Origin: Macrostomum lignano
Lineage: Eukaryota
Assembly: GCA_002269645.1 (NCBI GenBank)
Contig: NIVC01002324.1
Location: 119,653-183,652 of the forward strand
Reading direction: 5' to 3'
Length of the DNA: 64,000 bases
Shown here: positions 12,652 to 49,342 of the stretch, piece after piece
Numbering within the stretch: the stretch's first letter is position 1
Layout of the letters: the number at the start of each line of letters is the position of its first letter
Notes under the pieces: model-generated
The model's input: the letters and a program-made list of their open reading frames with translations, nothing else
What the model was told of the DNA's origin: nothing
Databases searched by the model: none
Position numbers and translations under genes: made by a program

Positions 12652-12918
12652 TCACCACCAGATCGGCTTGCTACCGGCTGCCGCAGCTGCTGCTCCTGCA
12701 CCGAAGAAGTACTCAAAGAAAGCCAGGCTGCTTTGAGGCTGCTGTTGATGTTGCTGCTGCTGCTGCTGCTGCTGCAACGCCGCAGATCCCCGGCCACCTC
12801 TGCTGCTGCCGCCGCTTCCGCCAGGGCACTTGCCCTTGCTCACGTGCAGCCTCACCTGGCCTTTGTTGGCGAACGGCCTGCTGCAGAACTGGCAGCGAAT
12901 CTTCTTTTTCGTCTGGGA

Positions 12919-12949
<31 letters not shown>

Positions 12950-14175: not shown

Positions 14176-14949
14176 CCCGGCTGAGGTCTGGGAAAGTTGG
14201 GTGACAGAGTTATGCAAATACAACTGCAGCATGGCAAGCTGAATGTGCTGCTTTGGTTGGGTATTTAAATGTATCCTCAGCAAGACCCCGGCCAGCCAAC
14301 CACAGTAACTCTCCTGACTGCAATCTGATTCGTTCGTTCGTTTTTTTTAGTCAAGCAGCAGACCAGAGGAGAGAACAGGCGACTTCTGTCCTTGGGGCGG
14401 CGGTGCTCCGGCGGTCTCTTTCATCTTCTAGTCCAACCCCCTGCCCCCATTTGCCTTATCGAGCAGACAGAGACTCGCACGGCGGCAGGGGGGGGGGGCG
14501 ACCGCTGCTGTCAAAAACTGAAACCCCCTCTTTGTGTTGCCTCTCGGGCCCGGCTGATATGACAGAATGGAATTAATTGTTAACAGGCTTGCAAATGCTG
14601 GGGGTGGGGGGCAAGCCAGAAAAAACAGGCCAAAGCAGACAGAGAACAGAGTCAAAAATGCTCAAAGCCCTGCTCTCCGACAGTCAAGTCAACAAGCTGC
14701 GTTACTGAAGGGGTTGGTCATAAATCAACTTGGAAATTCTTCTTTTTTTCATGGTCGACAGAAAGCAAAGCAACTTTTGTGTTGCCCGGTCTACTCGGCT
14801 CGAGGCGGTGCTGTGTTGGTACGGTTAAATTAATGATTAAACCACGGAATTGGTTGCTGTCTGGCGTTGCCTGAGTTTGCAATTCAATTTTAAGATGCTG
14901 GAGCGAGGTGGGCACCTTAATAAGGTAGCGGGTATCAGGGTTTGAATTT

Positions 14950-26300: not shown

Positions 26301-26558
26301 GCGACTCCAGCTGGCAGGCCACGTCATCCGCGCCGAGGCCTACTGTCCGGAGCCGGTGCAGGAGGTGCTGCTACTTACGTTGCAGGCACCCTACCGGCGG
26401 GGACAAGCGAGGACACGGCGCTACGTCGACTGTCTGCTGGCTGACGCCGGCGCCCCGGACTCTGCCGGCGGTGCGGCCTTTGTTCGCGCCCAGGCTTCGA
26501 AGCGTGCCATCTGACGTTGCTTTTGTGATCCGGCAGCGTACTCTGTTGTTGTTGTTGT
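23365..26558 (+). mobile_element. RTE-clade non-LTR retrotransposon, apparently intact
   Basis: Single APE+RT ORF, short 3'UTR ending in a (GTT)n tail (26545-26558), candidate TSD TGTAAGTTGT (23355-23364, 26559-26568). Single ORF plus tandem-repeat tail is typical of the RTE clade. Confidence 0.88.
23398..26514 (+). CDS. AP-endonuclease / reverse transcriptase polyprotein (1038 aa)
   Basis: APE motifs GTLNCRTL, LQEV, AYAP, GDLNA, LDHVLV, SDHRLL; RT motifs EQNGFR, FVDFRKAFDSV, GVLQGDTLAPFLF, YADD; no stops or frameshifts. Confidence 0.95.
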   Translation: MPLPPRGESGEPRLTAAAAKCGRTKRGQRSARRRVERRRERNWRGRQRGAARRAAAALAQLDLPGGAGDHEAHQHRAPAVPEGTLRVGTLNCRTLKATWRRGLLARLALDLRCDVIALQEVSIRADPGLHCEDLGAGWTLWYTSADERGRGGVGALIGPRLQQSCRCVSLSSRLLRVDVRLRGRNARLFCAYAPPATRSDETQAFFEQLSVRVEEMAQRDTVVILGDLNAVLRRSERSLFVTARENGNTGALEDFLERQDMVSANTRFRKSPGRLATFVGCKRRRRNARGRNATRRLAQLDHVLVRFRERRRVTNCRTITPLALRSDHRLLICDLRLRDPLYRPPKRPPRHYYRALRDAETRRRFAGAFVTALGDKRGGAEYAEVSAAVRAAAEQAVPLMRPAQRGQPVWQDDPAIDEAREDLERLRLSGRQTREAEEALAAVYLQRQQSAVDDAIQAVSAAGPDARGRVAWSVINTLTGRKRRIALNLAGDTPDERRNELRKFFAAIVNAPPPPLPENLRLPPETPLPAEESFNVAPVSTADVVKFARQSPGGKALGPDEVPTEALRIHCVATEVARVMNRVLSGEVAPNEWTTAHIVAIPKKPGTTKLEEHRGICLQSCAAKLFNRMLLSRLQPVLDPYLRPEQNGFRPHRGTVTQILALRRVIEEARIRQLTLILIFVDFRKAFDSVVRDALPEVLRAYNVPELLISAVMALYHGTTAAVSTPDGLSDFFETSSGVLQGDTLAPFLFILVLDWVLRTALPSNDDGFLLRRRVGRRQPERRLSVLGYADDLALLSSTVEGAQRQLDRLVAVAASVGLVVNTQKTVVLCVPDDTEAAIFCRGADGQASELPRCQQFVYLGGLVPDVREDLRRRRGLAWAAFRSIRSVLQSEALPDRQRAALFQAVIETVLLYNAETWTLTDSLEAQVDAAHAGLLRAAFKIGNERVTNTALYHRAGLARPSDLLRRRRLQLAGHVIRAEAYCPEPVQEVLLLTLQAPYRRGQARTRRYVDCLLADAGAPDSAGGAAFVRAQASKRAI

Positions 26559-34689: not shown

Positions 34690-36030
34690 CCACTGAAGAA
34701 TCAGGTTAGATACCTGCTAAAGAATCAGGGCATGGGAAATACCTGCTAAAGAATCAGGGTATGGGAAACACCCGCTGAAGAATCAGGGCATGGAAAATAC
34801 CCGCTGAAGAATCTGGGTAGGGGAAATACACGCTGAAGAATCAGGGTGGATACCCGCTGAAGAATGAGGGCATGGGAAATACTCGCTGAGGAATCAGGGT
34901 AGGGGAAATTCTCGCTGAAGAATGAGGGCATGGGAAATACTCGCTGAGGAATCAGGGTAGGGGAAATTCTCGCTGAAGAATGAGGGCATGGGAAATACTC
35001 GCTGAGGAATCAGGGTAGGGGAAATTCCCGCTGAAGAATCAGGGCATGGGAAATACCCGCTGAAGAATCAGGGTGGATACCCGCTGAAGAATCAGGGCAT
35101 GGGAAATACTCGCTGAAGAATCAGGGTGCATACCACAGATAATAAAAACACGTTTTTAGTATCTATGGTGGATACCCGCTGGAGAATCAGGGCATGGGAA
35201 ATACCCGCTGAAGAATCAGGGTGGATACCACAGATAATAAAAACACATGTTTTTAGTATCTATGGTGGATACCCGCTGGAGAATCAGGGCATGGGAAATA
35301 CCCGCTGAAGAATCAGGGTGGATACCCGCTGAAGAATCAGGGCATGGGAAATACCCGCTGAAGAATCTGGGTAGGGGAAATACCCGCTGAAGAATCAGGG
35401 CATGGGAAATACCCGCTGAAGAATCAGGGCATGGGAAATACCCGCTGAAGAATCAGGGTGGATACCTGCTGAAGAATCAGGGCATGGGAAATACCCGCTG
35501 AAGAATCAGGGTGGATACCACAGATAATAAAAACACATGTTTTTAGTATCTATGGTGGATACCCGCTGGAGAATCAGGGCATGGGAAATACCCGCTGAAG
35601 AATCAGGGTGGATACCCGCTGAAGAATCAGGGCATGGGAAATACCCGCTGAAGAATCTGGGTAGGGGAAATACCCGCTGAAGAATCAGGGCATGGGAAAT
35701 ACCCGCTGAAGAATCAGGGCATGGGAAATACCCGCTGAAGAATCAGGGTGGATACCTGCTGAAGAATCAGGGCATGGGAAATACCCGCTGAAGAATCAGG
35801 GTGGATACCACAGATAATAAAAACACATGTTTTTAGTATCTATGGTGGATACCCGCTGGAGAATCAGGGCATGGGAAATACCCGCTGAAGAATCAGGGCA
35901 TGGGAAATACTCGCTGAAGAATCAGGGTGGATACCCGCTGAAGAATCAGGGCATGGGAAATACCAGCTGAAGAATCGGGGCATGGGAAATACCCGCTGAA
36001 GAATCAGGGCATGGGAAACACCCGCTGATT
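34690..36030. repeat. Intronic 29-bp minisatellite GCTGAAGAATCAGGGCATGGGAAATACCC with a 290-bp higher-order repeat
   Basis: Block GTGGATACCACAGATAATAAAAACAC recurs at 35221, 35511 and 35801. Confidence 0.9.
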
Positions 36031-36053
36031 TGCAAGCTCCGTCCCCACCGCAG

Positions 36054-36344
36054 CCCGCACTGCCGGACGTCTCCCACTCTGTCGACTGGTTGGCATCGCC
36101 TGCGACCTCCGCGAGGCCTGCGGCTCCGCTGTGTCGCCCCGGTCGCATCGTCGTGATGGATGCCTCCGCCGCCGCGGACGTCGCCGAACAAGCGCGGCCG
36201 CCTCCCGGACGGTCGAAAATTCAACTGGCCGTGGCGGTCAGAGCCAAGGAGCTCGAACTGGAGCAGCTGCGTCGGACGATGGAACAGAACGAAGCGGCGT
36301 TGCAGCTGGTGTTCGAGGAGCGCCGGGCCGAACTGAAGGCCAGG
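36054..36344 (+). CDS. LZTS: LZTS/Fez1-family gene, exon 2
   Basis: Acceptor ccccaccgcag|, donor AGG|gtgagt; encodes KELELEQLRRTMEQNEAALQLVFEERR, resembling the LZTS/N4BP3 motif L.QLR..LDENE..I.QVYEE. Confidence 0.78.
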
Positions 36345-36479
36345 GTGAGTCGCCTCTTGTCTACTCTTGATTGAGGCTTCTGTTTTATGGTTGAAATTTT
36401 CCTGTCAGACCTTGGCATGCCTTTGCTCCTGTTTCTTTAGTTGTAATATGGGTCTGTCCGTCTATGTTTTCTTTCCATT

Positions 36480-36860
36480 TTTTACCTTCCTTTCTTTACC
36501 CGCTTTACCCTCTTTTTGACCCGCTTTTTCACATATTAATCCACTAATCTCGCTTTCCTTCCTATATATTAACCTGTTTTTACTCTGCTTATTCGCTTTA
36601 CCCTATTTTTAACCCGCTTTACCCTCTATTGGCCCGCTCTACCCTAACTTAACCCTTCCTACCCTCTGGTAACCCGCTTTGCCCTCCTTTAACCCGCTTT
36701 ACCCTCCTTTAACTCGCTTTGATCTCTTTTACCCGCTTTGCCCTCTGTTAACCTGCTTTACCTTTTTAACCTGCTTTACCCTCCTTTAACTGGCTTTGCC
36801 CTCTTTTAACCCGCTTTACCCTCTGTTAACCCGGTTTACCCTCTGTTAACCCGTCTTACC
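36480..36860. repeat. Degenerate ~20-bp intronic minisatellite (TTAACCCGCTTTACCCTC)
   Basis: Direct reading. Confidence 0.75.
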
Positions 36861-36881
36861 CTCCGCCCTCAATTCCTCCAG

Positions 36882-37292
36882 CTGGAATTCGAGCGGGCCA
36901 TCGGCGCCGAATTGGCGCCAGCCGTTTCCCAAGCGAACCGGCGCGCTCGCCAATCTGACCAGGCCGCTACGGAGCTGCGCGCCGTCTCCGAGCAGCGCCA
37001 ATCAGAGGCGCGCGCTCTCCGGTCGCGCCTGGGTGAGATCGAGCTGGAGACGCGCGAGAAAGCCGAACTGGAGCGCCGGCTTCAGCTGCAGCTGGCGGAG
37101 CTCGCCGAGTCGCTGGAATCGGCAACGCAGCGGCTGAGGCAGCGGCCGGGCTCGCCCAGGGACGCCGACGCTGTTGCAAGCCGCGCCTGTCAGACCGGCT
37201 GCGAATCCGCAGCCGACTGCGAGCCCCAGTTGGCGGCTGACGAACAGCTGGAAGCCGAGATTGCCGCAGCAAAATTGGCTTTGGAGGAGCAG
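36882..37292 (+). CDS. LZTS: LZTS/Fez1-family gene, exon 3 (coiled coil)
   Basis: Acceptor ttcctccag|, donor CAG|gtagga, phase 0-0; E/Q/R/L-rich heptads. Confidence 0.8.
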
Positions 37293-37319
37293 GTAGGACT
37301 GGGCTTAAGCTGGATAGGG

Positions 37320-38090
37320 ATTCCCCGTTGCATAATATGGATGAGAATTTCCCGTTTCAGAATCTGGATAGATTCCCCGTTTCAGAATCTGGATGGATTC
37401 CCCATTTCAGAATCTGGATAGGGATTCCCCATTTCAGAATCTGGATAGATTCCCCGTTTCAGAATCTGGATGGATTCCCCATTTCAGAATCTGGATAGGG
37501 AATCCCCATTTCAGAATCTGGATAGAGATTCCCCGTTTCAGAATCTGTATGGATTCCCCATTTCAGAATCTGGATAGGGATTCCCCATTTCAGAATCTGG
37601 ATAGATTCCCCGTTTCAGAATCTGGATGGATTCCCCATTTCAGAATCTGGATAGGGAATCCCCATTTCAGAATCTGGATAGAGATTCCCCGTTTCAGAAT
37701 CTGTATGGATTCCCCATTTCAGAATCTGGATAGGGATTCCCCATTTCAGAATCTGGATAGGGATTCCCCATTTCAGAATCTGGATAGAGATTCCCCATTT
37801 CAGAATCTTGACAGGGATTCCCCGTTTCAGAATCTTTATAAGGATTCCCCATTTCAGAGTTTTGATAGGGGTTCCGGGTTTCAGAATCTGGATAAGGATT
37901 CCCCATTTCAGAATCTTGACAGGGATTCCCCGTTTCAGAATCTTTATAAGGATTCCCCATTTCAGAGTTTTGACAGGGATTCCCCATTTCAGAATCTGGA
38001 TAGAGATTCCCCATTTCAGAATCACGATAGGGACTCCCTGTTTCAGAATCTTGACAGGGATTTCCCGTTTCAATATCGTAATAGGGATTC
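37320..38090. repeat. Intronic 25-27-bp minisatellite GATTCCCCATTTCAGAATCTGGATAGG
   Basis: Direct reading. Confidence 0.9.
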
Positions 38091-38220
38091 CCCAGACAAT
38101 TTAGTATGTTTATGGATATTTCTCTGACTCATAAAAGTGGCAATTCTGATTATTCTGTCTTACTCGAAACCCTTAGCAACTAGTTTGCATCCTCAATCGC
38201 TGTCCTTTTAACATTCTCAG

Positions 38221-38442
38221 AGCCGCGGCTTCAGCGCGGAGCGAGACCGCTGGCTCTACGAGAAGCGGCAGGTGCTGGCCTACCAGAAGCAGTTGCAGCT
38301 CAACCTGGTTCAACTGCGCTCCAAAACCACCCGCCTAGCAACCGATGTTGAGCAGCTGAACTCCGAGCTGGCTGAGAAGGAGACGCTGCTGATGCGACTG
38401 CGGGGCCAGGCGGTTCTGTCAGGAGGGGTGTCCGAGCGCTGA
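38221..38442 (+). CDS. LZTS: LZTS/Fez1-family gene, last exon (Fez1 C-terminal motif)
   Basis: Acceptor attctcag|; FSAERDRWLYEKRQVLAYQKQLQLNLVQL matches the LZTS signature F..ER..W..EKEKVI.YQKQLQ.NY.QM; TGA at 38440-38442. Confidence 0.85.
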   Translation, partial: SRGFSAERDRWLYEKRQVLAYQKQLQLNLVQLRSKTTRLATDVEQLNSELAEKETLLMRLRGQAVLSGGVSER

Positions 38443-38451
38443 CCCAAGGAT

Positions 38452-39000
38452 CCTGACACCTCAAATCCCACATCCTGACACCTCAAATCCCGCATCCTGA
38501 CACATCAAATCCCGCATCCTGACACATCAAATCCCGCATCCTGACACATCAAATCCCGCATCCTGACACCTCAAATCCCGCATCCTGACACATCAAATCC
38601 CGCATCCTGACACCTCAAATCTCACATCCTGACACCTCAAATCCCACATCCTGACACTCCAAATCCCGCATCCTGACACATCAAATCCCGCATCCTGACA
38701 CCTCAAATCTCACATCCTGACACCTCAAATCCCACACCCTGACACCTCAAATCCCACATCCTGACACATCAAATCCCGCATCCTGACACCTCAAATCTCA
38801 CATCCTGACACCTCAAATCCCACATCCTGACACCTCAAATCCCGCAACCTGACACTCCAAATCCCGTATCCTGACACCTCAAATCCCGCATCCTGACACC
38901 TCAAATCCCACATCCTGACACCTCAAATCCCGCATCCTGTCACCTCAAATCCCGCATTTTGACACCTCAAGTCCCTTATCCTTACACCCCAAATCTCGCA
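38452..39000. repeat. 22-bp minisatellite CCTGACACCTCAAATCCCGCAT directly after the LZTS stop codon
   Basis: About 24 copies starting ~10 bp after the TGA. Confidence 0.9.
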
Positions 39001-40478
39001 TCTAAATATAAAACTTTTTACGGTTGTGAAGCCCAACTAAATGATTCACCATCCATAATCTCATCTCATGATTCCGTCAAATTGGCATCTCAGCTTAACC
39101 AGATATAAATAATTTATTTAGAATGTGTAATTCTTATATTTATTTTTTATAGATTTGGGTCCAATTTTTTGCTTACAACTCGGTCCACCTCAGAGTATAG
39201 TCGAATTATTAAGCATCTTTTTGATGAAGTCGCATTGTGCAACTCATCCGCAATTATTGGTATAGTTGCGCTGTAACTGATAAGCAAATTACAGTTATAA
39301 TATTCGCGTATTGTACTTCTAGTTGCAGCCGTTAGTAGTCATGTATAGTATGAAAATTCGTTTTTTCAAAAATCAGCAAATACAAATTTTGACTGTGCAA
39401 TCCTTGGAATAATGCACTGTGTGGGCGTGTGGCTTACAGGTCTTCACTGAGATCATTCCCCCTAATGTTTGTGTTTGTTGGCATGATAAACTTCAGTTAG
39501 TTAAGCTTGCTGTTCCAGCCACTGTATTTATTCGTTCAATTCCACCGACTTCCTTTGCCAAGGATGCTCAATAAAGTCTTAGTGTCTACTTGATTTACTA
39601 TTTACATAAGACTTTGTGTTATTAATTTATTGTATGTTTTACACGTCTCTAGGATCTACCCAATTCACACGGGCTATTTATTTTCCTGGTTGCCGTGTGT
39701 AATACCTTAATTATAATTTTTCCAGTTCCAGTTTTCCGAAAATACATGTAGAAACTCTGTCAGGTTATTGATATTTTGTTGTTTCAAAAAAGTATTTATC
39801 GCTTAATTTTTTTCCTGATACAATGTCGCTTCGCTTTATCTAAATAAAAATACATAACCCGTTGTTTACCGCTGTAAATGCTTGTATTGTTGAGTTTTTG
39901 AAATGAATTTTGGTATTGAAATTTAAATCATAATTTTTTATTTGCATTAAATAATTATTTTCTCACAGGAAATCTAATCGAGGGGATTTGTTTGCGAAAA
40001 TTTCGAAAATGCTCTATTGTCTTTTGGACAATCGGATTTGGGTATTTAGTTTGGGAGCGCCGAAAATAGCGCCGTGACGCCTGTCTAAGCTGAGTGACTA
40101 AAGCATTGCAAGTGAGCAAGGAAGTTGGTCCTAATCGCAATTCGCTAAGAGCTTGACAATCGAGTCAAATACAACAAATTGTGTTGTAGACACAAGTAGT
40201 ATTTGATTGCTTGATAGTAATCAAAATGGAGTAAAACTATCAAAAGGCTTATGCTATTTGCCTATTTTGTATAGAATAAAACATATAGTTATAGTTGAAA
40301 CAATGAAGACAATCACGTGAACTATTTAAAAAAACAGTTTTCCGCGAATCTTATAAACTTTTGAGCACCACCACGGAAATTTTACTAGTTAATTATTTAC
40401 GTTTCTAGTTTTCACTGCACTCTTTTCTAATAATAAAATTAACTTCTGGTTAAGGAAACAGTATTAAGTTTTGCAGAA

Positions 40479-40559
40479 ATGCTTTATCGCAAAGGACTTG
40501 TAATGCAGCTTCCGCTGCTCTTTTCTCTGTGTATGCACCAACCTGTGTCTAGGGCAATG
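40479..40559 (+). CDS. GPX4: GPx4-like gene, first coding exon: 26-aa leader plus second Met (model: join 40479-40559, 42338-42417, 44213-44591, 46136-46183; 195 aa)
   Basis: ttttgcag|aaATG...GCAATG|gtaaga; encodes MLYRKGLVMQLPLLFSLCMHQPVSRAM; phase-0 donor fits exon 2; ending on an ATG parallels exon 1a of mammalian GPX4. Confidence 0.68.
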
Positions 40560-42048
40560 GTAAGACACTAAAAACAATGATGCCATTTAATGATAATTAT
40601 GTAATTATAGGTTAGTTCTTATATTAATGGTTGAATTTTTATTAAATTGCAGGCCTATCTAGTCTACATATCTAATGTTTTTAATGTTACAACAAGGCTA
40701 AATAACAAATATATGGCAAGTTGGCAATATATTACTTTACTGCATTAAATTATAGCCTAGTATGCCTAGCTATAGGGCCTATTTACTTGAAACTATTTCC
40801 AAAGAATATGTGAAATCCAAAATTATATTAATTTTTATTTCATTGTTGTTTTAAATTTAACAGTTTTTTTAATTTTAGAATAATATCTATGACTATAGTC
40901 TATTTTTAATGCAATCAGGGGCAGAGGAGGCTAATATTTTAGGAGGGCACTGAGCACAGGGCAAGGGGGGCACAGGTACCTTTGTAACTGCTAATTAAAG
41001 CTTAAAATCAGAAAATGCATTAAAAATTACTGTATGGACTCATTTTCTAGGAGGGAGGGCACATGCCCCTAGTGCCACAAGCTCCTGCTGCACATGAATC
41101 ACGATGAATGCAATGCAATATTATAATTAGGCCTACAATGTTTAAGATATTTGCTTATTTTTGGCTAAAGTATTTCATTTTTATTATTTTCTATAATTTT
41201 AAATTATTTTTTTGCATTTTATCATTTAAAAAGGTGATTTCATAATGTAGTAACTTAGGATAGTTAATCAGTGGCAAATCTAAGATTTTTAATATAATGG
41301 AAGAAGCAGATTGACCCAACTTTTTGGGCTTACAATCCTATCCTCTTTTATGCAAGTTTAGCCATGGCAAATGAAGGGTTGCCCCTCTCCCTTAGGCGGA
41401 GACCTAAAAAATCAAAGGGGGGACCAAGTGATTTTTTTCCAAAAACAGAGCCACCCCTCCACCCTCCTCCTGGGACTTTACCCTCCAGAATCTGCTGAAT
41501 GCTGAATCAGGTCTATTTTTAGAACAACTGTTCAATAGGCCTAGGCCAAAAGACAAAGGCTAGGTGGGAGAGGCCAGAGACAGGTTAGCTTTTTTCAAGG
41601 TTTATTTTCTTGTATATATAGCAATTTTACTAAAAATGGCAGACAGACTCAAACAAATGTAGGCAAGAAATATATATGTTGCGTGCATAATAAGATGAAG
41701 CAATGTAAAGGAATATATGATTTGTACAATTTATTTAATGAGTAATGCAGCTATACTATGTCTAAGGCAAGCATGATAAGGCAGTAATGAATGATACTAA
41801 ATAACTATTGCTAAACAACCACCACTACATCAATCTAAAAAAGTTTTATAAAGAGTTTTTATTACTTATATTTAATATTATATGATATGTGATTTTAGTC
41901 TATACCATATATTAAATTGATATTTACAGTAGTTTTTGATTCTTTGTTAATTTATTTAAGGCTTATTGATATAAAAAATTAAATGAAAAGTTTTTATTTA
42001 GCTTGTTTTGTCATTCTAACTAATATATCTTGTTTTTATATCATACAT

Positions 42049-42208
42049 GTGCAACCTTTGGAATCACCTGGCCATTTCTATTGGCAACACACATATGCAA
42101 GTCGCTATTGGCTGAGAGCCGTCACGTGACTACTATTCCATCCAATAGCGACTTACATGTGTGTGTCTGTTGCCAATAGAAACAGCCGGGTGAATCCCTA
42201 GGTTGCAC
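42049..42208. mobile_element. 160-bp imperfect palindrome (MITE-like) in GPx intron 1
   Basis: Arms GTGCAACC...TTTCTATTGGCAACA...AAGTCGCTATTGG and their inverse, around a loop containing GTCACGTGAC. Confidence 0.6.
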
Positions 42209-42337
42209 CCAAGCATGTTTTATACTCTGTCTTTATAGGTTAAGTCTAATTTATTTTATGTTGTTCTATGTTTTTTTAGATAAATCAAGCTATGAAAAAC
42301 TGATATTAAAAATGAATAATTTCATAACTGCTTTCAG

Positions 42338-42417
42338 GCCTCATCTGCTTCAGGAACAGTGTATGACTTCTCTGCCAAAACCATTGATGGAGACATGGTT
42401 TCACTAAGCAAGTACAA
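42338..42417 (+). CDS. GPX4: GPx4-like gene, exon 2
   Basis: ctttcag|ASSASGTVYDFSAKTIDGDMVSLSKY(K)|gtgagt; matches GPx4 HEFSAKDIDGHMVNLDKYR including the phase-2 intron. Confidence 0.9.
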
Positions 42418-42894
42418 GTGAGTGAATATTTTTGCTATCTATTCCTTTTTGTTTCGATAAATAACCTAAGAATATTTTGCATACTACTGTTGGGAATTTC
42501 TAAGTAGTGTTTTGCAATGATGACTCAATGTAGTAAGCGTGGATAGCAATGGGCCATGCGAGCAAATAAAACGCACTCTTCTACATCCCTGGATACAGGA
42601 GTAAGCTGAATATTATGTTTATTCAAGGCCTGCGTTGACTGATTAATTGAGTAGCAATTGCATTGTCCCATGCCTTTGTATTCATAACTGCAGTGTGATT
42701 GCTCTACCTATCAGTTTTGCCTTCGATTCCTCGTTACCATGGTATCACTCGCAAATCAAGTAGATTGCATTAGAACTGTGTGCTGACTATTAGCGGGTTC
42801 TGCTATAGATTATATCTGTACATCTATAGTGGCTGGAGAATTTGCCTTTGACAGATGAATGCACCGTTTTTATTGTTGTGCGTAGAGAGATGAG

Positions 42895-44135
42895 AGACAG
42901 GGATGCTAGAGGAGATGGGAGATAAAGATGCTAGGGGAGATTAGAGACAGAGATGCTAGGGGAGACAGAGATGCTAGGGGAGACTGAGATGCTAGGAGAG
43001 ACAGATGCTAGGATAGACAGAGATGCTAAGGGAGATGGGAGACAGAAATGCTAAGGGAGATGGGAGACAGAGATGCTAAAAGAGACAGAGATGCTAGGAG
43101 AGACAGAGATGCTAGAAGAGACAGAGATTCTAGGGGAGACAGAGATGCTAAGGGAGATGGGAGACAGAGATGCTAAGGGAGATGGGAGACAGAGATGCTA
43201 GGGGAGACTGAGATACTAGGGAAGACAGAGATGCTAGCGTGACAGAGATGCTAGGAGAGACAGAGATGCTAGGAGAGACAGAGATGCTAAAGAAGATGGG
43301 AGATAGAGATGCTAGAAGAGACAGAGATGCTAGGGGAGACAGAGATGCTAGGAGAGATAGAGATGCTAGGGGAGACAGAGATGCTAGGAGAGACAGAGAT
43401 GCTAGGGGAGACTGAGATGCTAGGAGAGACAGAGATGCTAGGGGAGACTGAGATGCTAGGGGAGACAGAGATGCTAGAAGAGACAGAGATGCTAGGAGAG
43501 ACAGAGATGCTAGGGGAGACCGAGATGCTAGGAGAGACAGAGATGCTAGGAGAGACAGAGATGCTAGGGGAGACAGAGATGCTAGGAGAGACAGAGATGC
43601 TAGGGGAGACAGAGATGCTAGGAGAGACAGAGATGCTAGGAGAGACAGAGATGCTAGGGGAGACAGAGATGCTAGGAGAGACAGAGATGCTAGGAGAGAC
43701 AGAGATGCTAGGGGAGACAGAGATGCTAGGAGAGATAGAGATGCTAGGAGAGACAGAGATGCTAGGGGAGACAGAGATGCTAGGAGAGACAGAGATGCTA
43801 GGGGAGACAGAGATGCTAGGAGAGACAGAGATGCTAGGAGAGACAGAGATGCTAGGGGAGACAGAGATGCTAGGGGAGACAGAGATGCTAGGAGAGACAG
43901 AGATGCTAGGAGAGACAGAGATGCTAGGGGAGACAGAGATGCTAGGAGAGATAGAGATGCTAGGGGAGACAGAGATGCTAGGGGAGACAGAGATGCTAGG
44001 AGAGACAGAGATGCTAGGAGAGACAGAGATGCTAGGGGAGACAGAGATGCTAGAAGAGACAGAGATGCTAGGGGAGACTGAGATGCTAAGGGAGACAGAG
44101 ATGCTAGGGGAGACTGAGATGCTAAGGGAGACAGA
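42895..44135. repeat. Intronic 18-bp minisatellite GAGACAGAGATGCTAGGR
   Basis: About 65 copies; source of the LGETEM/SVSPSI ORFs. Confidence 0.93.
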
Positions 44136-44212
44136 GACCCGCGATGACAATGTGCTGGGCAAGCCTCCCAATGCCCCTCCCCACCCAACCCCACCGCAAA
44201 TCCCGCTCGCAG

Positions 44213-44591
44213 AGGTCGCGTCCTTGTCGTGACCAACGTGGCGTGCCTCTGAGGTGCCACGGAGAGCAACTACGCCCAGCTGGTCGACCTGCACACTCGA
44301 CTAGCGGGCCGGGGTCTCTCCATCGCCGCGTTCCCCTGCAACCAGTTTGGCAGTCAGGAGCCGTGGCCCGAGGCTCAGATCAAAGAGTTCGTTGTTAGCC
44401 GTTTCGGCGTTAAATTCGACCTGTATGCCAAAGTTGACGTCAATGGCGAGGGGACACATCCGTTGTTCTCGTTTTTGAAAGCTCAGCTGCCCGGCACGCT
44501 CATGGATTTCATCAAGTGGAATTTCACCAAGTTTCTGATTGACAGGCGAGGCGTGCCAGTGAAACGATACGGGCCCAATGTGGCGCCCAAG
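44213..44591 (+). CDS. GPX4: GPx4-like gene, exon 3 with selenocysteine codon (TGA 44250-44252)
   Basis: GRVLVVTNVACL-U-GATESNYAQL...AFPCNQFGSQEP...IKWNFTKFLIDRRGVPVKRYGP; catalytic Sec, Gln, Trp and Asn positions present; ctcgcag| acceptor and AAG|gtgagc donor. Confidence 0.95.
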
Positions 44592-44719
44592 GTGAGCTGC
44601 TGGGATGTGGGACAATAGTGGGCTGGTGAACTCTCGAAGTATAAGTCACTCTAACGTTCTAAGGGCTCTATATCTTCTATATAATAAATTCTGTAAATCC
44701 CACTCTGTAAATTCCCATT

Positions 44720-45170
44720 CTGCAAGTCCCACTCTGCAAGTCCCACTCTACAAGTCCCACTCTACAAGTCCCACTCTACAAGTCCCACTGAAATTCCCAC
44801 TCTGCAAGTCCCACTCTACAAGTCCCACTCTGCAAGTCCCACTCTGCAAGTCCCACTCTACAAGTCCCACTCTGCAAGTCCCACTCTGCAAGTCCCACTC
44901 TACAAGTCCCACTCTGAAAGTCCCACTCTGCAAGTCCCACTCTGAAAGTCCCACTCTGCAAGTCCCACTCTGCAAGTCCCATCCTGCAAGTCCCACTCTA
45001 CAAGTCCCACTCTGAAAGTCCCACTCTGCAAGTCCCACTCTGAAAGTCCCACTCTGCAAGTCCCACTCTGCAAGTCCCATCCTGCAAGTCCCACTCTACA
45101 AGTCCCACTCTGAAAGTCCCACTCTGCAAGTCCCACTCTGCAAGTCCCACTCTACAAGTCCCGCTCTTAT
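44720..45170. repeat. Intronic 14-bp minisatellite AAGTCCCACTCTGC
   Basis: Direct reading. Confidence 0.9.
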
Positions 45171-46135
45171 AGTCCCAATCTCTAGGCCCTCTCCTTTTTT
45201 ATTCCCTCTCTGAGCCTGCAGTTTTTACTTCAGTACTAATCCTCAAATTTATCAGATTCCCAGCAACAACAAAGCAGTGACTCCTCACTCTGTATTATTG
45301 TAACTATAGTAACAATCTGATCCCTAAATACTGAATAGAGGTGGCAAATTTTGTAGACATAAACCTTTACCTAACTAATTATCAATTTGTGTCAACACTC
45401 AATCCGTGCAAACAGCTCTTCGGGTTGGCATAGTAACGCTAATTGACTGCAGGGAGTCGTGGCTAATTAATTTAATTACACAAATGCAGTAGCTGCACTA
45501 TTGAATCATAGAGTCAACCCTAAAGACACTGTGTGTACACTGTGTGACAATGGATAAATAATCAGCGGTCCCAAGTGCGTGACAACGATTTGTCTATGGC
45601 TCGCGCCTTCCTACATTGTTTTTCTGTTTGACGATCCTACAGACAGTGCATTGTTTGTAGTAATGGGTTGTTCTGCATTACTCGTAAAAATGTGAATAAT
45701 GATCGTCAAATTGTTAAACAATGAGAATTTAAATTCAATTCAATTTAAATTCAAATTCAATTTAAATTCAATGCCGCTGTACATCCTGTGTGAGTGCTTG
45801 CCGGCGTACTTATGCGTGTTGTGTGCTGAGGGTCAGCAAAACTGGACATCTCGCCTTTAACCTGCATGTATAATGGGACAGAGAAGTTCTATAAATAGAT
45901 TTATAAGCTTTATAGAAGTATTCGATTATAAATGGGGTTTTCGATGTTGCAGTGTTGGTCATAGACAACACAATTACTATCAAGCCAGTGGATATTTTGT
46001 TGTTTCCCTAGCTTGTATCTGGACTGGAGACTAGCTAGAGAAGTCCGTGCCTTAAGACTTTTAAAATTTTTCATTTTGTCCCGACGTGTCACACAATCAC
46101 ATCTTGTTTTAAACGTTTCATTCACTATTTTGCAG

Positions 46136-46183
46136 GACATGGAGGCGGACATCCTTGAGCTACTCAACAAGGACGAATTGTAG
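46136..46183 (+). CDS. GPX4: GPx4-like gene, last exon DMEADILELLNKDEL*
   Basis: ttttgcag| acceptor, phase 0; aligns with the GPx4 terminal helix (VIEKDLPHYF); TAG at 46181-46183. Confidence 0.85.
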   Translation, partial: DMEADILELLNKDEL

Positions 46184-46291
46184 AAGTTGATGTTGAGAGT
46201 AATTTTACTGATACAATTTAATTATTACTCGTTATAAATCAAATTACTTGGCTTGACCTCAGACTCTCAAAACTCTTATTAAGAGCACTCG

Positions 46292-46349
46292 ATGAAGCGC
46301 GATCTTGAAAAAATCGATTGCTAAAATTGATTGGAGATCGATTGCTGAT
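46292..46349 (+). promoter_or_regulatory. Candidate type-II SECIS element in the GPx 3'UTR
   Basis: AUGAA...UGAU quartet; helix GCG-CGAUCUU / GAGAUCG(AU)UGC; unpaired AAA run, then mini-helix AUCGAUU/AAUUGAU; about 110 nt after the stop of a UGA-containing GPx. Helix I is not convincing by eye. Confidence 0.7.
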
Positions 46350-46699
46350 TGATAAATTAGCCCAGACTTAGATGTTGAACTAAGTATTATTCCAGTGTGC
46401 AACTGCATCTTTGTTTGGGCTAGCCTTGATAAGAGATTGAAGTCTGTGGCCGGTTTGCAAATATTTCTCATCTTTTAACAATAGCTCAAAAGAAACAAAA
46501 TTAAACTGTTTTTACATTCGAATTAAAAAAAATTTAGTTCTCCTTCATGTCTTCCCGACGATATGCTTGATTAAGATTTTGATTTGAACACTGGCTTTAC
46601 TGTTAGTTCTTTAGTTTTGGAACTCGTCCTAAATGATTGGCCAGAGGAATCATATCAACGAAGAAAAGTATTGAAGAAAGTTAATTGGTCGGGGAGGGG

Positions 46700-47450
46700 C
46701 ACGGGTTTTAGGTGGTGGGGTAGGAATGAGTGTGGAGTTGAAGAGGGATGGGAGTTGGGGAGGGACTGGGGTTGAGGCGGCGGTCAGTGGGGGGTTAGGA
46801 ATGAGTGCGGAGTTGAAGAGGGACGAAGGGTGGGGGGAATGAGGGTTAAAGCGGCGGTCAATGGGGGGGGGGTAGGAATGAGTGCGGAGTTGAAGAGGGA
46901 CGAAGGGTGGGGGGAATGAGGGTTGAAGCGGCGGTCAATGGGGGGTAGGAATGAGTGCGGAGTTGAAGAGGGACGAAGGGTGGGGGGAATGGGGGTTGAA
47001 GCGGCGGTCAATGGGGGGTAGGAATGAGTGCGGAGTTGAAGAGGGACGAAGGGTGGGGGGAATGAGGGTTGAAGCGGCGGTCAATGGGGGGGTAGGAATG
47101 AGTGCGGAGTTGAAGAGGGACGAAGGGTGGGGGAATGAGGGTTGAAGCGGCGGTCAAATGGGGGTAGGATTGAGTGCGGAGTTGAAGAGGGACGAAGGGT
47201 GGGGGGGATGGGGGTTGAAGCGGCGGTCATTGGGGGTAGGAATGAGTGCGGTGTTGAAGAGGGATAAGGAATAGGAAGGGACTGTGGGTTGAAGCGGCCG
47301 TCAGTGGGGGGTAGGATTAAGTGCGGAGTTGAAGAGGGACGAGGGGTGGGGGGAATGGGGGTTGAAGCGGCGGTCAATGGGGGGGGTAGGAATGAGATGA
47401 GTGCGGAATTGAAGAGGGACGAGGGTGGGGAGGGACGGGTTGAGGCGGTT
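46700..47450. repeat. G-rich ~72-bp minisatellite
   Basis: About 10 degenerate copies of GGGGTAGGAATGAGTGCGGAGTTGAAGAGGGACGAAGGGTGGGGGGAATGAGGGTTGAAGCGGCGGTCAATG. Confidence 0.85.
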
Positions 47451-49019
47451 GCCAGTTTCTTTAAAGGTTTGCTACATTTAATTTTTGTGTTATATATTAA
47501 GTAAAGTGCGAACTTGAAACGGCAGGGATAAGGAAATGATTGGACATTGGAATACGGATTTTTCAGCGGCTAATGTCCAAAACAGTACAACTGCTTTGTT
47601 CTCTATAGCTAATTGGAAATTGATTAAGACCAATTAACGTACCAATCGATCCACTTTAGTATCATGAAGTCACCAAAGTCACTTACGCTGCATGGTTAAT
47701 CAATTAGAGCGTTTGACAATTGTGTCTCAATAAACTTTCCATGGTGCTTTGTGCCAGTAATTTTGCTGCCAATTATTGAATTGAATTCCCTGGAAGCTTA
47801 GCATTTAGTGCGGCGGGGAAATTAATGAATTTGTTGGGCCTGGTGCGGGAAGTAGCAATGGCTTTTGGAATTTAGCAGACTGGTCTATCTGAGGTCTATT
47901 GTTTCAGGCGGACGGACTGCGAGTATGTCAGGTTATAACCGGGCTGTCTCTACCTGTGTGCTCACCTGTGCGCTCTCCTGAGTGCTCAGAATATACGATA
48001 ACCTTATTTGGGATTTGTTGGGAATGGGCTTGTCTGCGTGATCTCGTCTTCAGTTTAATTTGGGAAGAGGCTTATACCGGTGCTGCTTTGGCTTTTTTAC
48101 GAGCCTCGGTAGGTATACATTGTCAGTTGTCTACGTGAGTCAGTTTGGAATTTGGATATTGAGTCAGTTTGGATATTGAGTCAGTTTGGATATTGAGTCA
48201 GTTATCATCTTCAGTCAATTATTATTTTGAGTCAGTAATCACCTTGAGTCAGTTATCATCTTGAGTAAACTATTTTTTAATTCTGTTATGGTTTCTAGTA
48301 ATACTTTTCATAAATCATTACTCAAATACGTGCACTAAATCAGTCAGTTAGTAAAATAGAAAATTGTCACAGAAAGTGTTTATTTGATTTAAATTTAAAC
48401 TATTAGTGTTTACAATACAGCGCCACAGTAACAGAATTAATTGAATAATTATGCTTCACTTTTAAAAGGTTGGACAATTGACGCAATGACTTCACCACAG
48501 ACAAGACGCATTAGAGAGAGCAGAAGTGCGCAGAAATGCTTAATGACACAAAAGCAGTCATGAAAGTTAGGAAAGCAATGTAATCCACCCACTGTCAGAA
48601 AACTGTTGAGCTATTTTGTCAAACAGAAATTTCAATTTCACGCTGAAAGAAAAGAGTGAATTCGTGTTTTCACTTTGCAAAGAAACAAATTGCGCATAAC
48701 AGCTTTAAGAAGTTGATTTATCGCATAATTTATGAGGTTTGCCGTGTAAGTTTGTGGCGCAGTCGAGCGCGACTTTGAGCAGTAATTTAAGGACAACTCA
48801 CAGAAAGACTGCGATCGCGAAGAAGGACCCACACTTGCGTCATATGTCGACTATGGATATAAGCGCGAAATGTAATGTATAAGCGCAAATGTAGAATTGA
48901 TGTGAGCAATGCGTTTATATATGGGTGCAGATTATTCACTGTGAAATGGTGACTTTTTATGTTGGCATCCCTATCAGTGATTCAGATGATGACTTCTCAG
49001 CCACTGCAGTGTAACGCTT

Positions 49020-49225
49020 CCACTTCGGACATTGGGTGCATAACTGGCTTCCCCATCGGTCATTGGGTGCATAACCGGCTTCTACTTCGGTCATTGGGTG
49101 CATAACTGGCTTCCCCATCGGTCATTGCGGCATAACTGGCTTCCCCATCCGTCATTGGGGTGCATAACTGGCTTCCCCATCCGTCATTGGGGTGCATAAC
49201 TGGATTCCCCATCGGTCATTGATGC
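49020..49225. repeat. ~31-bp minisatellite GGTCATTGGGTGCATAACTGGCTTCCCCATC
   Basis: About 6 copies, followed by a hairpin CATAGATCTT...AAGATCTATG (49226-49289). Confidence 0.8.
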
Positions 49226-49342
49226 CATAGATCTTATATACAGTACACTATATACTACTGTATACATGTATACTGTATAAAGATCTATGATTAAGGCAAA
49301 CATGTTAATACCATCGCAGCCTGTTCTTTTCATTCGGCTAGC

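What the first reader, a model, noticed from the sequence alone, without database searches (positions are those of the whole stretch)
40479..46183. Selenocysteine GPx4 ortholog with an N-terminal leader and a C-terminal KDEL: candidate ER-resident seleno-peroxidase
Seen: in-frame TGA in NVACL-U-G, the full catalytic tetrad, a SECIS candidate, a 26-aa leader with basic n-region, hydrophobic core and S-R-A cleavage-like end, and the terminus LNKDEL*. Established: three intron positions (after the second ATG, in KY-K, before the last helix) match mammalian GPX4, whose leader is mitochondrial and which has no KDEL; the known vertebrate ER GPxs (GPx7, GPx8) use Cys, not Sec. Inference: GPx4 may have been independently retargeted to the ER lumen while keeping Sec, with a leaderless cytosolic form from Met27. 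I cannot tell whether this is already described.
Basis: partly seen in the sequence, partly recalled or inferred. Interest (0 to 1): 0.8.

Follow-up and report, generated by a model that had tools for sequence, protein, structure and literature searches.

The report
Selenocysteine GPx4-type peroxidase ending in KDEL
A flatworm (Macrostomum lignano) gene encodes a selenium-containing GPx4-type peroxidase with a signal-peptide-like leader and a C-terminal KDEL, so it is probably kept in the endoplasmic reticulum, where the known animal glutathione peroxidases use cysteine instead; localisation has not been tested.

Summary
Four GT-AG exons (40479-40559, 42338-42417, 44213-44591, 46136-46183) encode 195 aa. 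The in-frame TGA (Sec67) lies in NVACL-U-G, the tetrad is U67/Q102/W156/N157, a canonical type-2 SECIS-like hairpin lies 109 nt past the stop, and the protein ends LNKDEL.

The window is identical to Macrostomum lignano contig NIVC01002324.1. GenBank's transcript-derived annotation already joins exons 1-2-3 from ATG1 but stops at the UGA (PAA58869.1, 66 aa). The leader exon is therefore in real mRNA, and the KDEL end is in no database entry I could find. Two further genomic copies keep the leader, Sec, SECIS and KDEL.

The protein is GPx4/flatworm-PHGPx type, not GPx7/8. ER residence is the best reading (about 0.6). Exact KDEL plus an n-h-c leader is a strong signature, and a divergent paralogue lacks both. 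However, crude features cannot exclude a mitochondrial presequence like that of mammalian GPX4.

Added here: the flatworm spliced leader ends in AUG, and joined to the exon-2 acceptor it is in frame. That would give the leaderless form without exon 1.

This is a new variant of a known kind, of moderate interest.

The parts
40469..40476 (+). TTTTGCAG acceptor-like motif 2 nt upstream of ATG1. It is a possible spliced-leader acceptor, in which case the SL AUG would be out of frame and open a 9-codon uORF.
   Evidence: Sequence. Matches the M. lignano trans-acceptor motif YTNCAG (PMC8629364). The TTTTGCAG octamer itself is identical in all three gene copies; L126 has a 1-nt deletion just upstream of it. 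Frame test. Use in vivo not tested.
40479..40559 (+). Exon 1 coding part. ATG1 is followed by a 26-aa leader (n-region MLYRKG, h-region LVMQLPLLFSLCM, c-region HQPVSRA) and by Met27 as the last codon, then donor GTAAGA.
   Evidence: it is the only ATG|GTRAG donor in the 6 kb upstream of exon 2. Included in the transcript-derived CDS PAA58869.1. The reading frame is kept in the two other copies despite a 3-nt insertion.
40560..42337 (+). Intron 1 (1778 nt, 32% GC). It contains a MITE-like inverted repeat at 42049-42208.
   Evidence: Copies of the repeat occur in other M. lignano loci at 87-93% identity.
42338..42417 (+). Exon 2 (ASSASGTVYDFSAKTIDGDMVSLSKYK, ends in phase 2). Its acceptor TTTCAG|GCC also fits the spliced-leader acceptor motif. 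No in-frame ATG is contiguous with it.
   Evidence: there is a stop 6 codons upstream. SL...ATG joined here reads MASSASG in frame.
42418..44212 (+). Intron 2 (1795 nt), mostly an 18-nt tandem array (42943-44137, about 65 copies).
44213..44591 (+). Exon 3, the catalytic core. It holds Sec67 (TGA 44250-44252), Cys96, Gln102 and Trp156/Asn157. There is no resolving Cys: Ser stands in VVSRFG.
44592..46135 (+). Intron 3 (1544 nt), with a 14-nt tandem array at 44690-45167.
   Evidence: The paralogue has an intron at the same position.
46136..46183 (+). Exon 4 coding part: DMEADILELLNKDEL plus TAG. KDEL codons are 46169-46180.
   Evidence: Aligns with the last helix of S. mansoni GPx and of the M. 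lignano paralogue. Identical in copy L127; LLKKDEL in copy L126.
46285..46355 (+). SECIS element, form 2. AUGA 46292-46295, an 11-bp helix II with a 2-nt bulge, an unpaired A-run from 46308, an apical 7-bp mini-helix, and GA 46347-46348.
   Evidence: Fold: -26.4 kcal/mol, z = -2.8. Rare in the window. The stretch 46292-46348 is 100% identical in all three copies, while the surrounding 3'UTR of L126 is about 95% identical. Not detected by Rfam.
46500..46505 (+). ATTAAA, a possible polyadenylation signal about 150 nt past the SECIS.
   Evidence: Sequence only. Conserved in the three copies. The poly(A) site is not verified.

Best explanation
This is gene Mlig017886.g2 of Macrostomum lignano, an expressed, intact four-exon gene for a monomeric GPx4/PHGPx-type selenoperoxidase.

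Shown:
- UGA67 is the catalytic codon and is followed by a canonical form-2 SECIS-like hairpin in the 3'UTR.
- mRNA models join exon 1 to exons 2 and 3, so translation from AUG1 yields a 195-aa precursor.

Inferred:
- The 26-residue N-terminus acts as a cleavable signal peptide (basic n-region, 13-residue uncharged hydrophobic core, Pro at -5, S-R-A before the cut).
- The precursor enters the ER co-translationally, is cut before Met27, and the soluble 169-aa enzyme is returned from the Golgi by the KDEL receptor through its exposed C-terminal KDEL.
- In the lumen it would reduce H2O2 (for example from Ero1) or lipid hydroperoxides. As it has no resolving Cys, the selenenic acid would be recycled by GSH or by PDI-family thiols.
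- A leaderless cytosolic enzyme of the same sequence can arise in two ways: initiation at AUG27, which has the better Kozak context, or trans-splicing of the spliced leader onto the exon-2 acceptor, where its terminal AUG is in frame.
For: - Gene model, Sec codon and KDEL.
- Family: Pfam GSHPx 2.2e-40. Best solved relatives are S. mansoni GPx 2v1m (2.4e-64) and GPX4, aligned gaplessly over residues 32-192. GPx7/8 reach only about 1e-28.
- Tetrad invariant.
- SECIS.
- Leader exon in transcript-derived CDSs of three gene copies: PAA58869.1, PAA75720.1, PAA90359.1. Annotation method: PMC5730564.
- All three copies encode full-length leader-Sec-KDEL proteins. An in-frame indel preserves the leader frame, and dN/dS is roughly 0.36.
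- Leader features are signal-peptide-like: both N-terminal basic residues sit at positions 4-5, a 19-residue uncharged run follows, and the hydrophobic moment is 0.42. Known or probable signal peptides give 0.23-0.52 and mitochondrial leaders 0.67-0.71.
- Co-occurrence: the diverged M. lignano paralogue (69% aa identity, loci L002/L003) has neither a leader ORF nor KDEL; it ends DEIGK.
- Leader plus K[DE][DE]L recurs in other GPx lineages that look ER-targeted: SmedGPx1 with KEDL, wasp P0206 with KDEL, protist L037 with KDEL.
- Spliced-leader route: all flatworm SLs end in AUG and can donate the start codon (PMC12582326). SL sequence and acceptor motif. Frame.
Against: - There is no localisation data, and no SignalP/TargetP run was possible.
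- The leader has net charge +3, no acidic residue and an Arg at -2 of the putative cut. Its hydrophobicity equals that of the mitochondrial leader of human GPX4, which sits at the same place in the gene.
- Fasciola GPx1 has a similar leader-plus-second-Met layout.
- The three copies are only 0-5% diverged, so conservation of KDEL and the leader is weak evidence.
- GPx C-terminal helices are rich in K/E/D/L, which makes a chance KDEL less improbable than in an average protein. A metatranscriptome Sec-GPx4-like protein ends in KKEEL without an AUG-initiated leader.
- Rfam does not call the SECIS.
- The exon 3-4 junction and the 3' end are not confirmed by RNA here.
Confidence: 0.6

Rival explanations
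1. The leader is a mitochondrial presequence, as in mammalian GPX4. AUG1 then gives a mitochondrial form and AUG27 a cytosolic form, and the C-terminal KDEL is a chance extension of the K/E/L-rich last helix with no role.
For: - The layout matches GPX4: a leader of about 27 aa followed by a second in-frame Met at the start of the mature enzyme.
- Net charge is +3, there are no acidic residues, and Arg sits at -2.
- Hydrophobicity is equal to that of the human and mouse GPX4 leaders.
- Bae et al. read flatworm leaders by analogy with mitochondrial PHGPx.
- In the other gene copies, H20 of the leader is an Arg.
Against: - Two of the three basic residues are clustered at positions 4-5, and a 19-residue uncharged stretch follows. 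The amphipathic moment (0.42) is lower than in the mitochondrial comparators (0.67-0.71).
- An exact KDEL on a non-secretory protein is rare.
- The leader and KDEL occur together in this paralogue and are both absent from the other one.
Confidence: 0.2
2. The enzyme is essentially cytosolic. Most mature mRNA either starts translation at AUG27 or is trans-spliced with the spliced leader at the exon-2 acceptor, which supplies the AUG. The exon-1 form is a minor or untranslated isoform, and KDEL is inert.
For: - SL...AUG joined to TTTCAG|GCC is in frame and gives MASSASG.
- The paralogue's first coding exon starts at the equivalent Ala codon directly behind an acceptor. It has no genomic ATG and no good upstream ATG|GT donor, so its Met is most likely SL-donated.
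- About 30% of M. lignano genes are trans-spliced.
- AUG27 has the stronger context (G at -3, G at +4).
- If the SL is added at 40477 instead, its AUG opens a uORF across AUG1.
Against: - Transcript-derived gene models at three loci include exon 1 and start the CDS at AUG1.
- The leader frame is preserved through an in-frame indel.
- This reading does not explain why an exact KDEL accompanies the leader.
- It is not exclusive with the main explanation, since both isoforms may exist.
Confidence: 0.15
3. The protein enters the secretory pathway but is secreted or sent to another compartment, like the leader-bearing Sec-GPxs of trematodes. KDEL retrieval would then be ineffective.
For: Leader-bearing Sec-PHGPxs without a retrieval motif are common in trematodes and planarians, for example SmGPx2, SjGPx2, PwGPx2 and SmedGPx2.
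Against: Unlike those proteins, this one ends in the canonical KDEL, which follows the last helix and so should be accessible.
Confidence: 0.05

Closest known systems
Mammalian GPX4 (phospholipid hydroperoxide glutathione peroxidase), mitochondrial and cytosolic isoforms
   Same: - Monomeric GPx4-type fold by sequence, at about 50% identity (E about 1e-52).
- Sec in the same position, with the U/Q/W/N tetrad and a 3'UTR SECIS.
- A first exon with two in-frame AUGs, the first opening a leader of about 27 aa.
- Introns reported as conserved between flatworm and vertebrate genes (PMC2679728).
   Different: - The mammalian leader is mitochondrial, and the protein ends ...DLPHYF with no retrieval motif.
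- The mammalian gene has 7 exons; this one has 4.
- Here the second Met is the last codon of exon 1.
Flatworm Sec-PHGPx (S. mansoni GPx1, PDB 2v1m; leader-bearing trematode and planarian GPxs of Bae et al. 2009)
   Same: - Closest solved relative (2.4e-64).
- VAC-x-U-G active-site motif and no resolving Cys.
- Hydrophobic N-terminal extensions are already described in many flatworm members.
   Different: None of the Sec-type members in that alignment ends in a KDEL-like motif. SmGPx1 has no leader.
GPx7 and GPx8 (vertebrate ER GPxs) and planarian SmedGPx1
   Same: - N-terminal signal or anchor plus a C-terminal KDEL-type retrieval motif: REDL, KEDL, and KEDL in SmedGPx1.
- Monomeric, with no resolving Cys.
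- Thought to descend from a GPx4-like selenoprotein (PMC3316567, PMC10958145).
   Different: - They use Cys, not Sec.
- They are only distantly similar to this protein (about 1e-28 against 1e-64 for flatworm GPx4-type). The ER motif here is therefore an independent acquisition.
Cys GPx4-like proteins with signal peptide plus KDEL in other invertebrates and protists (Belonocnema kinseyi P0206; metagenome locus L037)
   Same: The same combination of hydrophobic leader, GPx4-like core and ...KDEL.
   Different: - Catalytic Cys.
- Unrelated lineages, at 49% identity or less.
- They are only predicted proteins.
M. lignano paralogue A0A1I8I0I2 / PAA78947.1 (loci L002, L003)
   Same: - Same species, 69% aa identity.
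- Sec, a SECIS-like hairpin (AUGA ... AA ... GA) seen by eye in the 3' UTR of the related transcript L004 but not picked up by my strict scanner, and the same intron positions at KYK|G and APK|D.
- The first coding exon starts at the same Ala codon.
   Different: - No leader ORF and no genomic start codon next to the exon, so the AUG is probably donated by the spliced leader.
- Ends DEIGK.
- Different genomic neighbourhood.

Membership tests
Glutathione peroxidase family (Pfam PF00255) | Significant match to the GSHPx profile over its full length | tested here: met
   E 2.2e-40, 137 bits against a cut-off of 27; profile positions 1-108 of 108.
Glutathione peroxidase family (Pfam PF00255) | Catalytic tetrad: Sec/Cys, Gln, Trp, Asn | tested here: met
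   U67, Q102, W156, N157. The last three are invariant in alignment A1.
GPx4 / PHGPx type (monomeric) | Closest to GPX4-type sequences and lacking the oligomerisation-loop insertion of GPx1/3 | tested here: met
   Single gapless stretch against S. mansoni GPx and GPX4 structures (1e-64 to 1e-50). GPx1, GPx2, GPx3 and GPx6 score only 1e-24 to 1e-33; GPx1 (1gp1) matches in two stretches, the others in one, mostly over the N-terminal part only.
Eukaryotic selenoprotein | In-frame UGA at the position of the catalytic Cys/Sec of homologues | tested here: met
   TGA 44250-44252 aligns with U/C of homologues. Kept in three gene copies.
Eukaryotic selenoprotein | SECIS element in the 3'UTR, judged by curated covariance models | tested here: not met
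   No SECIS family hit at E <= 10 in 46100-49100. The Rfam SECIS models may lack sensitivity for flatworm elements (my knowledge).
Eukaryotic selenoprotein | SECIS element in the 3'UTR, judged by canonical AUGA..AA..GA core, helix II length and form-2 apex | tested here: met
   46292-46348. 12 nt between AUGA and the A-run, 11 bp in helix II, and a mini-helix. Identical in three copies.
Eukaryotic selenoprotein | Selenium actually incorporated | not testable with these tools
   Needs 75Se labelling or mass spectrometry.
Soluble ER-resident proteins retrieved by the KDEL receptor | C-terminal KDEL-type tetrapeptide | tested here: met
   ...LLNKDEL*. KDEL in all three copies.
Soluble ER-resident proteins retrieved by the KDEL receptor | Cleavable N-terminal signal peptide | tested here: inconclusive
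   The n-h-c layout with small residues at -1 and -3 and a low amphipathic moment is signal-peptide-like. However, the values overlap with the mitochondrial GPX4 leader. No SignalP/TargetP was available.
Soluble ER-resident proteins retrieved by the KDEL receptor | ER-luminal localisation | not testable with these tools
   Needs tagged expression or fractionation.
GPx7/GPx8 clade | Catalytic Cys and closest similarity to GPx7/8 | tested here: not met
   Sec, not Cys. GPx7 1.5e-29 and GPx8 8e-28, against 2.4e-64 for flatworm GPx.
Mitochondrial GPX4-like isoform | Amphipathic, Arg-rich presequence upstream of a second initiator Met | tested here: inconclusive
   A second Met is present. Net charge is +3, but two of the three basic residues are clustered at the N-terminus and the moment is 0.42, against 0.67-0.71 for the comparators.

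The most novel reading that the evidence does not exclude
M. lignano keeps a selenocysteine GPx4-type enzyme in the ER lumen. That would be a living counterpart of the presumed intermediate between Sec-GPx4 and the Cys enzymes GPx7/8, retargeted to the ER before any Sec-to-Cys change. The choice between the ER and cytosolic forms would be made by alternative cis-splicing of exon 1 versus trans-splicing of the spliced leader onto exon 2, with the leader's terminal AUG supplying the start codon.
Probability: 0.2. Interest if true: 0.7.

Novelty: new variant of a known kind. Interest (0 to 1): 0.5.

Why it matters
The ER glutathione peroxidases known in animals (GPx7, GPx8 and their invertebrate relatives) all use cysteine. 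The loss of selenocysteine has been explained as an adaptation that lets them oxidise PDI rather than burn glutathione (PMC8614756; PMC10958145). A selenocysteine GPx4-type enzyme resident in the ER would test that explanation directly. It would also show that ER retargeting of GPx4 can precede, or do without, the Sec-to-Cys change.

M. lignano has working transgenesis, so localisation with and without the leader and KDEL is readily testable.

There is also a practical point. All M. lignano GPx selenoproteins seen here are truncated or mis-spliced in public annotation: a 66-aa N-terminal fragment, a 115-aa C-terminal fragment, and a model that skips the Sec region. As a result the KDEL end is invisible in databases.

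Tried and rejected
- Rfam scan of the 3' region found no SECIS. I relied instead on the fold, a motif scan and conservation between copies.
- A loose ATGA..AA..GA pattern is not specific: 274 hits against about 320 expected. It was replaced by a helix-aware scan. That scan misses the more irregular SECIS of the paralogue, so it is a specificity check only.
- Two whole-database protein searches with the full protein and with a chimeric N+C query found no near-identical sequence. The annotated fragment surfaced only when the 30-aa exon-1 ORF was searched on its own.
- Exact look-ups of 8 possible transcript-derived ORFs (Met27 start, M9, M19, C-terminal 45 aa, intron-3 retention) were all absent. 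This is uninformative.
- The LINE ORF is not on record as a gene.
Only three were GPx-like. In L123 I saw no convincing AUGA-type SECIS.
- I considered that exon 1 could be a chance ORF or an SL-RNA-like element. This was rejected because it lies in transcript-derived CDSs at three loci and has no SL sequence.
- I considered that the window gene and L002/L003 are orthologues from different species. This was rejected because the window is identical to an M. lignano contig and the flanks are not syntenic.

Full report
**What is there**

Reading 40200-46800 and assembling the exons gives a clean four-exon gene on the + strand:

| Part | Coordinates | Note |
|---|---|---|
| Exon 1 (coding) | 40479-40559 | ATG1 to Met27, donor GTAAGA |
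| Exon 2 | 42338-42417 | acceptor TTTCAG |
| Exon 3 | 44213-44591 | catalytic core |
| Exon 4 (coding) | 46136-46183 | ends in TAG |

- All introns are GT..AG.
- The CDS is 588 nt, i.e. 195 codons plus TAG.
- The only in-frame stop is TGA at 44250-44252 (codon 67), in NVACL-U-GAT.
- The protein ends ...DILELLNKDEL.
- Pfam GSHPx matches at 2.2e-40 over the whole profile.
- In a 26-sequence alignment, Q102, W156 and N157 are invariant. The tetrad U67/Q102/W156/N157 is therefore complete.
- There is no resolving Cys: Ser stands in VVSRFG.
- The best solved relatives are S. mansoni GPx (2v1m, 2.4e-64) and mammalian GPX4 (about 1e-52), each as one gapless stretch. GPx7 and GPx8 reach only about 1e-28.
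- It is therefore a GPx4/PHGPx-type enzyme, not a GPx7/8 orthologue.

**SECIS**

- Rfam reports nothing at E <= 10 in 46100-49100.
- The sequence 109 nt past the stop nevertheless has the canonical layout. AUGA lies at 46292-46295, followed by 12 nt and an unpaired A-run. A 7-bp apical mini-helix follows, and GA lies at 46347-46348.
- Helix II has 11 pairs with one 2-nt bulge.
- The minimum-free-energy fold contains these helices (-26.4 kcal/mol, z = -2.8).
- A loose pattern is not specific. A scan that also demands helix II finds only 2 sites on the + strand and 5 on the - strand of the whole window, three of them inside a tandem repeat.
- That puts the chance of one falling in the first 500 nt of this 3'UTR at a few percent.

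**Whose gene it is, and whether exon 1 is real**

- A LINE ORF in the window (23398-26514) hits named proteins of Macrostomum lignano almost exclusively (one weak hit is from Sparganum proliferum).
- Searching the 30-aa exon-1 ORF alone against 1.8 billion representatives returned one strong hit. It is a 66-aa protein identical to the predicted exon 1 + exon 2 + exon 3 sequence up to the UGA.
- That protein is PAA58869.1 / A0A267EDH8, BOX15_Mlig017886g2, on NIVC01002324.1. The 13.8-kb locus is 100% identical to the window.
- The GenBank annotation of this assembly was made exclusively from RNA-seq-derived transcript models (StringTie/TACO plus a de novo transcriptome), with ORFs called by TransDecoder (PMC5730564).
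- The junctions 40559/42338 and 42417/44213 therefore rest on transcript evidence, and the leader exon is part of a real mRNA.
- The annotated protein stops at the Sec codon. No protein entry that runs through the Sec codon to this C-terminus turned up in my two protein searches.
- Exon 4 is supported by homology. The M. lignano paralogue and S. mansoni GPx align through DMEAD..LL, and the paralogue has an intron at the same APK|D position.

**Other copies**

- M. lignano is a recent polyploid. Two further copies (PAA75720.1 and PAA90359.1; loci L126 and L127) encode MLYRKGLVMQLPLLFSSLCMRQPVSRAM....
- Reconstructing their CDSs gives intact 196-aa proteins with the leader, the TGA and KDEL. L126 ends LLKKDEL.
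- The leader differs by an in-frame 3-nt insertion, one replacement (H20R) and two synonymous changes.
- L126 differs from the window at 13 of 588 coding sites (6 synonymous, 7 not; dN/dS roughly 0.36). The 3'UTR is about 95% identical, yet the 57-nt SECIS is unchanged.
- This shows that the arrangement is not an assembly artefact and is under some constraint. At 0-5% divergence it is only weak evidence for the function of KDEL.

**A more distant paralogue**

- A0A1I8I0I2 / PAA78947.1 (loci L002 and L003) shares 69% identity over the core and lies in a different neighbourhood.
- Its first coding exon starts at the equivalent Ala codon directly behind an acceptor (ttttttag|GCT TCA AGT). It has no genomic ATG there and no good ATG|GT donor upstream. 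It ends DEIGK.
- The paralogue without KDEL therefore also lacks the leader, while the gene with KDEL has one. This co-occurrence is the best internal argument that the two signals belong together.

**How the leaderless form can arise**

- In the window there is no in-frame ATG contiguous with exon 2; a stop lies 6 codons upstream. The start codon must therefore come from outside exon 2.
- One source is exon 1, whose last codon is Met27. It is the only ATG|GTRAG donor in the 6 kb upstream.
- The other source is the spliced leader. The M. lignano SL ends ...TTATTGCATG with donor GTAAG, and trans-acceptors fit YTNCAG (PMC8629364).
- All flatworm SLs end in AUG, which can serve as initiator (PMC12582326 citing Cheng et al. 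2006).
- Joined to TTTCAG|GCC, the SL AUG reads MASSASG... in frame.
- The same route is the likely origin of the Met in the paralogue's annotated MASSAEPS.
- A second acceptor-like TTTTGCAG lies 2 nt before ATG1. An SL added there would put its AUG out of frame and open a 9-codon uORF across ATG1.
- Which of these sites is used in vivo was not testable here.

**Signal peptide or mitochondrial presequence**

No predictor was available, so I compared crude features with known leaders.

| Feature | Window leader | Comparators |
|---|---|---|
| Position of basic residues | R4, K5, and R25 in the c-region | spread through the mitochondrial leaders |
| Uncharged run | 19 residues | - |
| Mean Kyte-Doolittle, 9-residue window | 2.2 | 2.3 in the human GPX4 mitochondrial leader |
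| Net charge | +3 | +3 in the human GPX4 mitochondrial leader |
| Hydrophobic moment | 0.42 | 0.23-0.52 in known or probable signal peptides; 0.67-0.71 in mitochondrial leaders |

- The leader also has Pro at -5 and Ser/Ala at -3/-1 of the putative cut.
- These features lean towards a signal peptide.
- The human GPX4 leader, known to be mitochondrial, has the same net charge and hydrophobicity. The test is therefore inconclusive on its own.
- The exact KDEL tips the balance. On my own knowledge, exact KDEL is rare at the C-termini of non-secretory proteins.
- Here KDEL accompanies a leader, as it does in SmedGPx1 (Cys, KEDL), a wasp GPx (P0206, KDEL) and a protist GPx (L037, KDEL).
- I put ER residence of the AUG1 product at about 0.6, a mitochondrial leader at about 0.2, and a mainly cytosolic enzyme with an inert KDEL at about 0.15.

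**Comparison with what is known**

- Bae et al. 2009 (PMC2679728) already described several of these features. They reported Sec- and GSH-dependent PHGPx genes in flatworms and their SECIS elements. They also reported hydrophobic N-terminal extensions in many trematode and planarian members, and tight conservation of introns with vertebrate GPX4.
- In their alignment, the only flatworm sequence with a KDEL-like end is SmedGPx1. It has Cys (VASECG) and is GPx7-like. None of the Sec-type sequences has such an end.
- GPx7 (REDL) and GPx8 (KEDL) are the ER enzymes of vertebrates, and both use Cys (PMC3824332).
- They are thought to derive from a GPx4-like selenoprotein (PMC3316567 and PMC10958145).
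- No paper in the searchable library mentions this gene or Macrostomum GPxs.
- What is new is the combination: a Sec-retaining GPx4-type enzyme carrying the full ER signature.
- The combination may not be unique in nature. A metatranscriptome Sec-GPx4-like protein ends KKEEL but has no AUG leader (L001). A GC-rich metagenome ORF (L123) has TGA at the active site, a hydrophobic N-terminus and KEEL, though I could not find a convincing SECIS there.

**Verdict**

- The ER interpretation is plausible and is the best reading, but it is unproven.
- The intron-conservation and leader aspects are already in the literature.
- I rate it a new variant of a known kind, interest 0.5.

Noticed in passing
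window 35479-49252 (= L125): This part of the window is 100% identical to Macrostomum lignano assembly Mlig_3_7, contig NIVC01002324.1 positions 155131-168904. The organism is therefore M. lignano strain DV1.
   Followed up: yes
window 40479-44252; L002/L003 10001-13488: Public annotation truncates or distorts every GPx selenoprotein seen here. PAA58869.1 stops at the UGA (66 aa). PAA78947.1 is only the post-UGA ORF (115 aa). UniProt A0A1I8I0I2 skips the Sec region with an artificial intron.
   Followed up: yes
L002 9744-9830, L003 9743-9830: The first coding exon of the paralogous GPx begins at the Ala2 codon right behind an acceptor, with no genomic ATG. Its initiator Met is most likely donated by the spliced leader's terminal AUG.
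   Followed up: partly
window 23398-26514 (+): Intact 1038-aa LINE ORF (endonuclease plus reverse transcriptase) in a 65% GC island. It is 57-92% identical to many M. lignano proteins, several of which are fused to host-gene models in UniProt.
   Followed up: partly
window 42943-44137 and 44690-45167: Long tandem arrays fill introns 2 and 3 of the GPx gene: an 18-nt unit in about 65 copies and a 14-nt unit in about 34 copies.
   Followed up: partly
window 42049-42208: MITE-like element with 54-nt inverted arms in intron 1. Copies at 87-93% identity lie near the paralogous GPx loci L002/L003.
   Followed up: partly
window 46717-47430: G-rich 73-nt tandem repeat (about 9.6 copies), starting about 200 nt after the putative poly(A) signal of the GPx gene.
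   Followed up: no
window 35479-38442 (+); 37393-38127: The upstream neighbour on the same strand is a Fez1-domain gene (from the record's annotation), ending about 2 kb before ATG1. The same order is kept at copy L126. The long ORF at 37393-38127 is a translated tandem repeat, not a gene. Whether the pair forms an operon with SL trans-splicing at 40477 is open.
   Followed up: no
window 48732-48766 (+): A second site passes my SECIS-like scan, 2.5 kb downstream of the gene. Rfam gives a weak MIR8032 match at the same place. It is probably chance.
   Followed up: no
L123 (metagenome, - strand, ORF ending at position 2538 of the reverse complement): A GC-rich eukaryote-like ORF for a GPx-like protein with TGA at the active-site position (VASR-TGA-GY), a hydrophobic N-terminal segment and a C-terminal KEEL. 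It may be another Sec GPx with an ER motif. No clear AUGA-type SECIS was found.
   Followed up: partly
L037 (metagenome, - strand): Cys GPx with a signal-peptide-like start and C-terminal KDEL. It also has a Cys-rich ShK-like insertion between the FLR motif and WNF.
   Followed up: no
L001 25-129 (soil metatranscriptome): A Sec GPx4-like mRNA ending in KKEEL. The frame is open for 35 codons upstream of its AUG and encodes a leader-like peptide (..TVLTALLVAGSRARASG-M), but it contains no AUG. Non-AUG initiation is possible.
   Followed up: no
window 12652-14283 (-): 543-aa ORF with weak C2H2 zinc-finger matches, in a GC-rich stretch.
   Followed up: no
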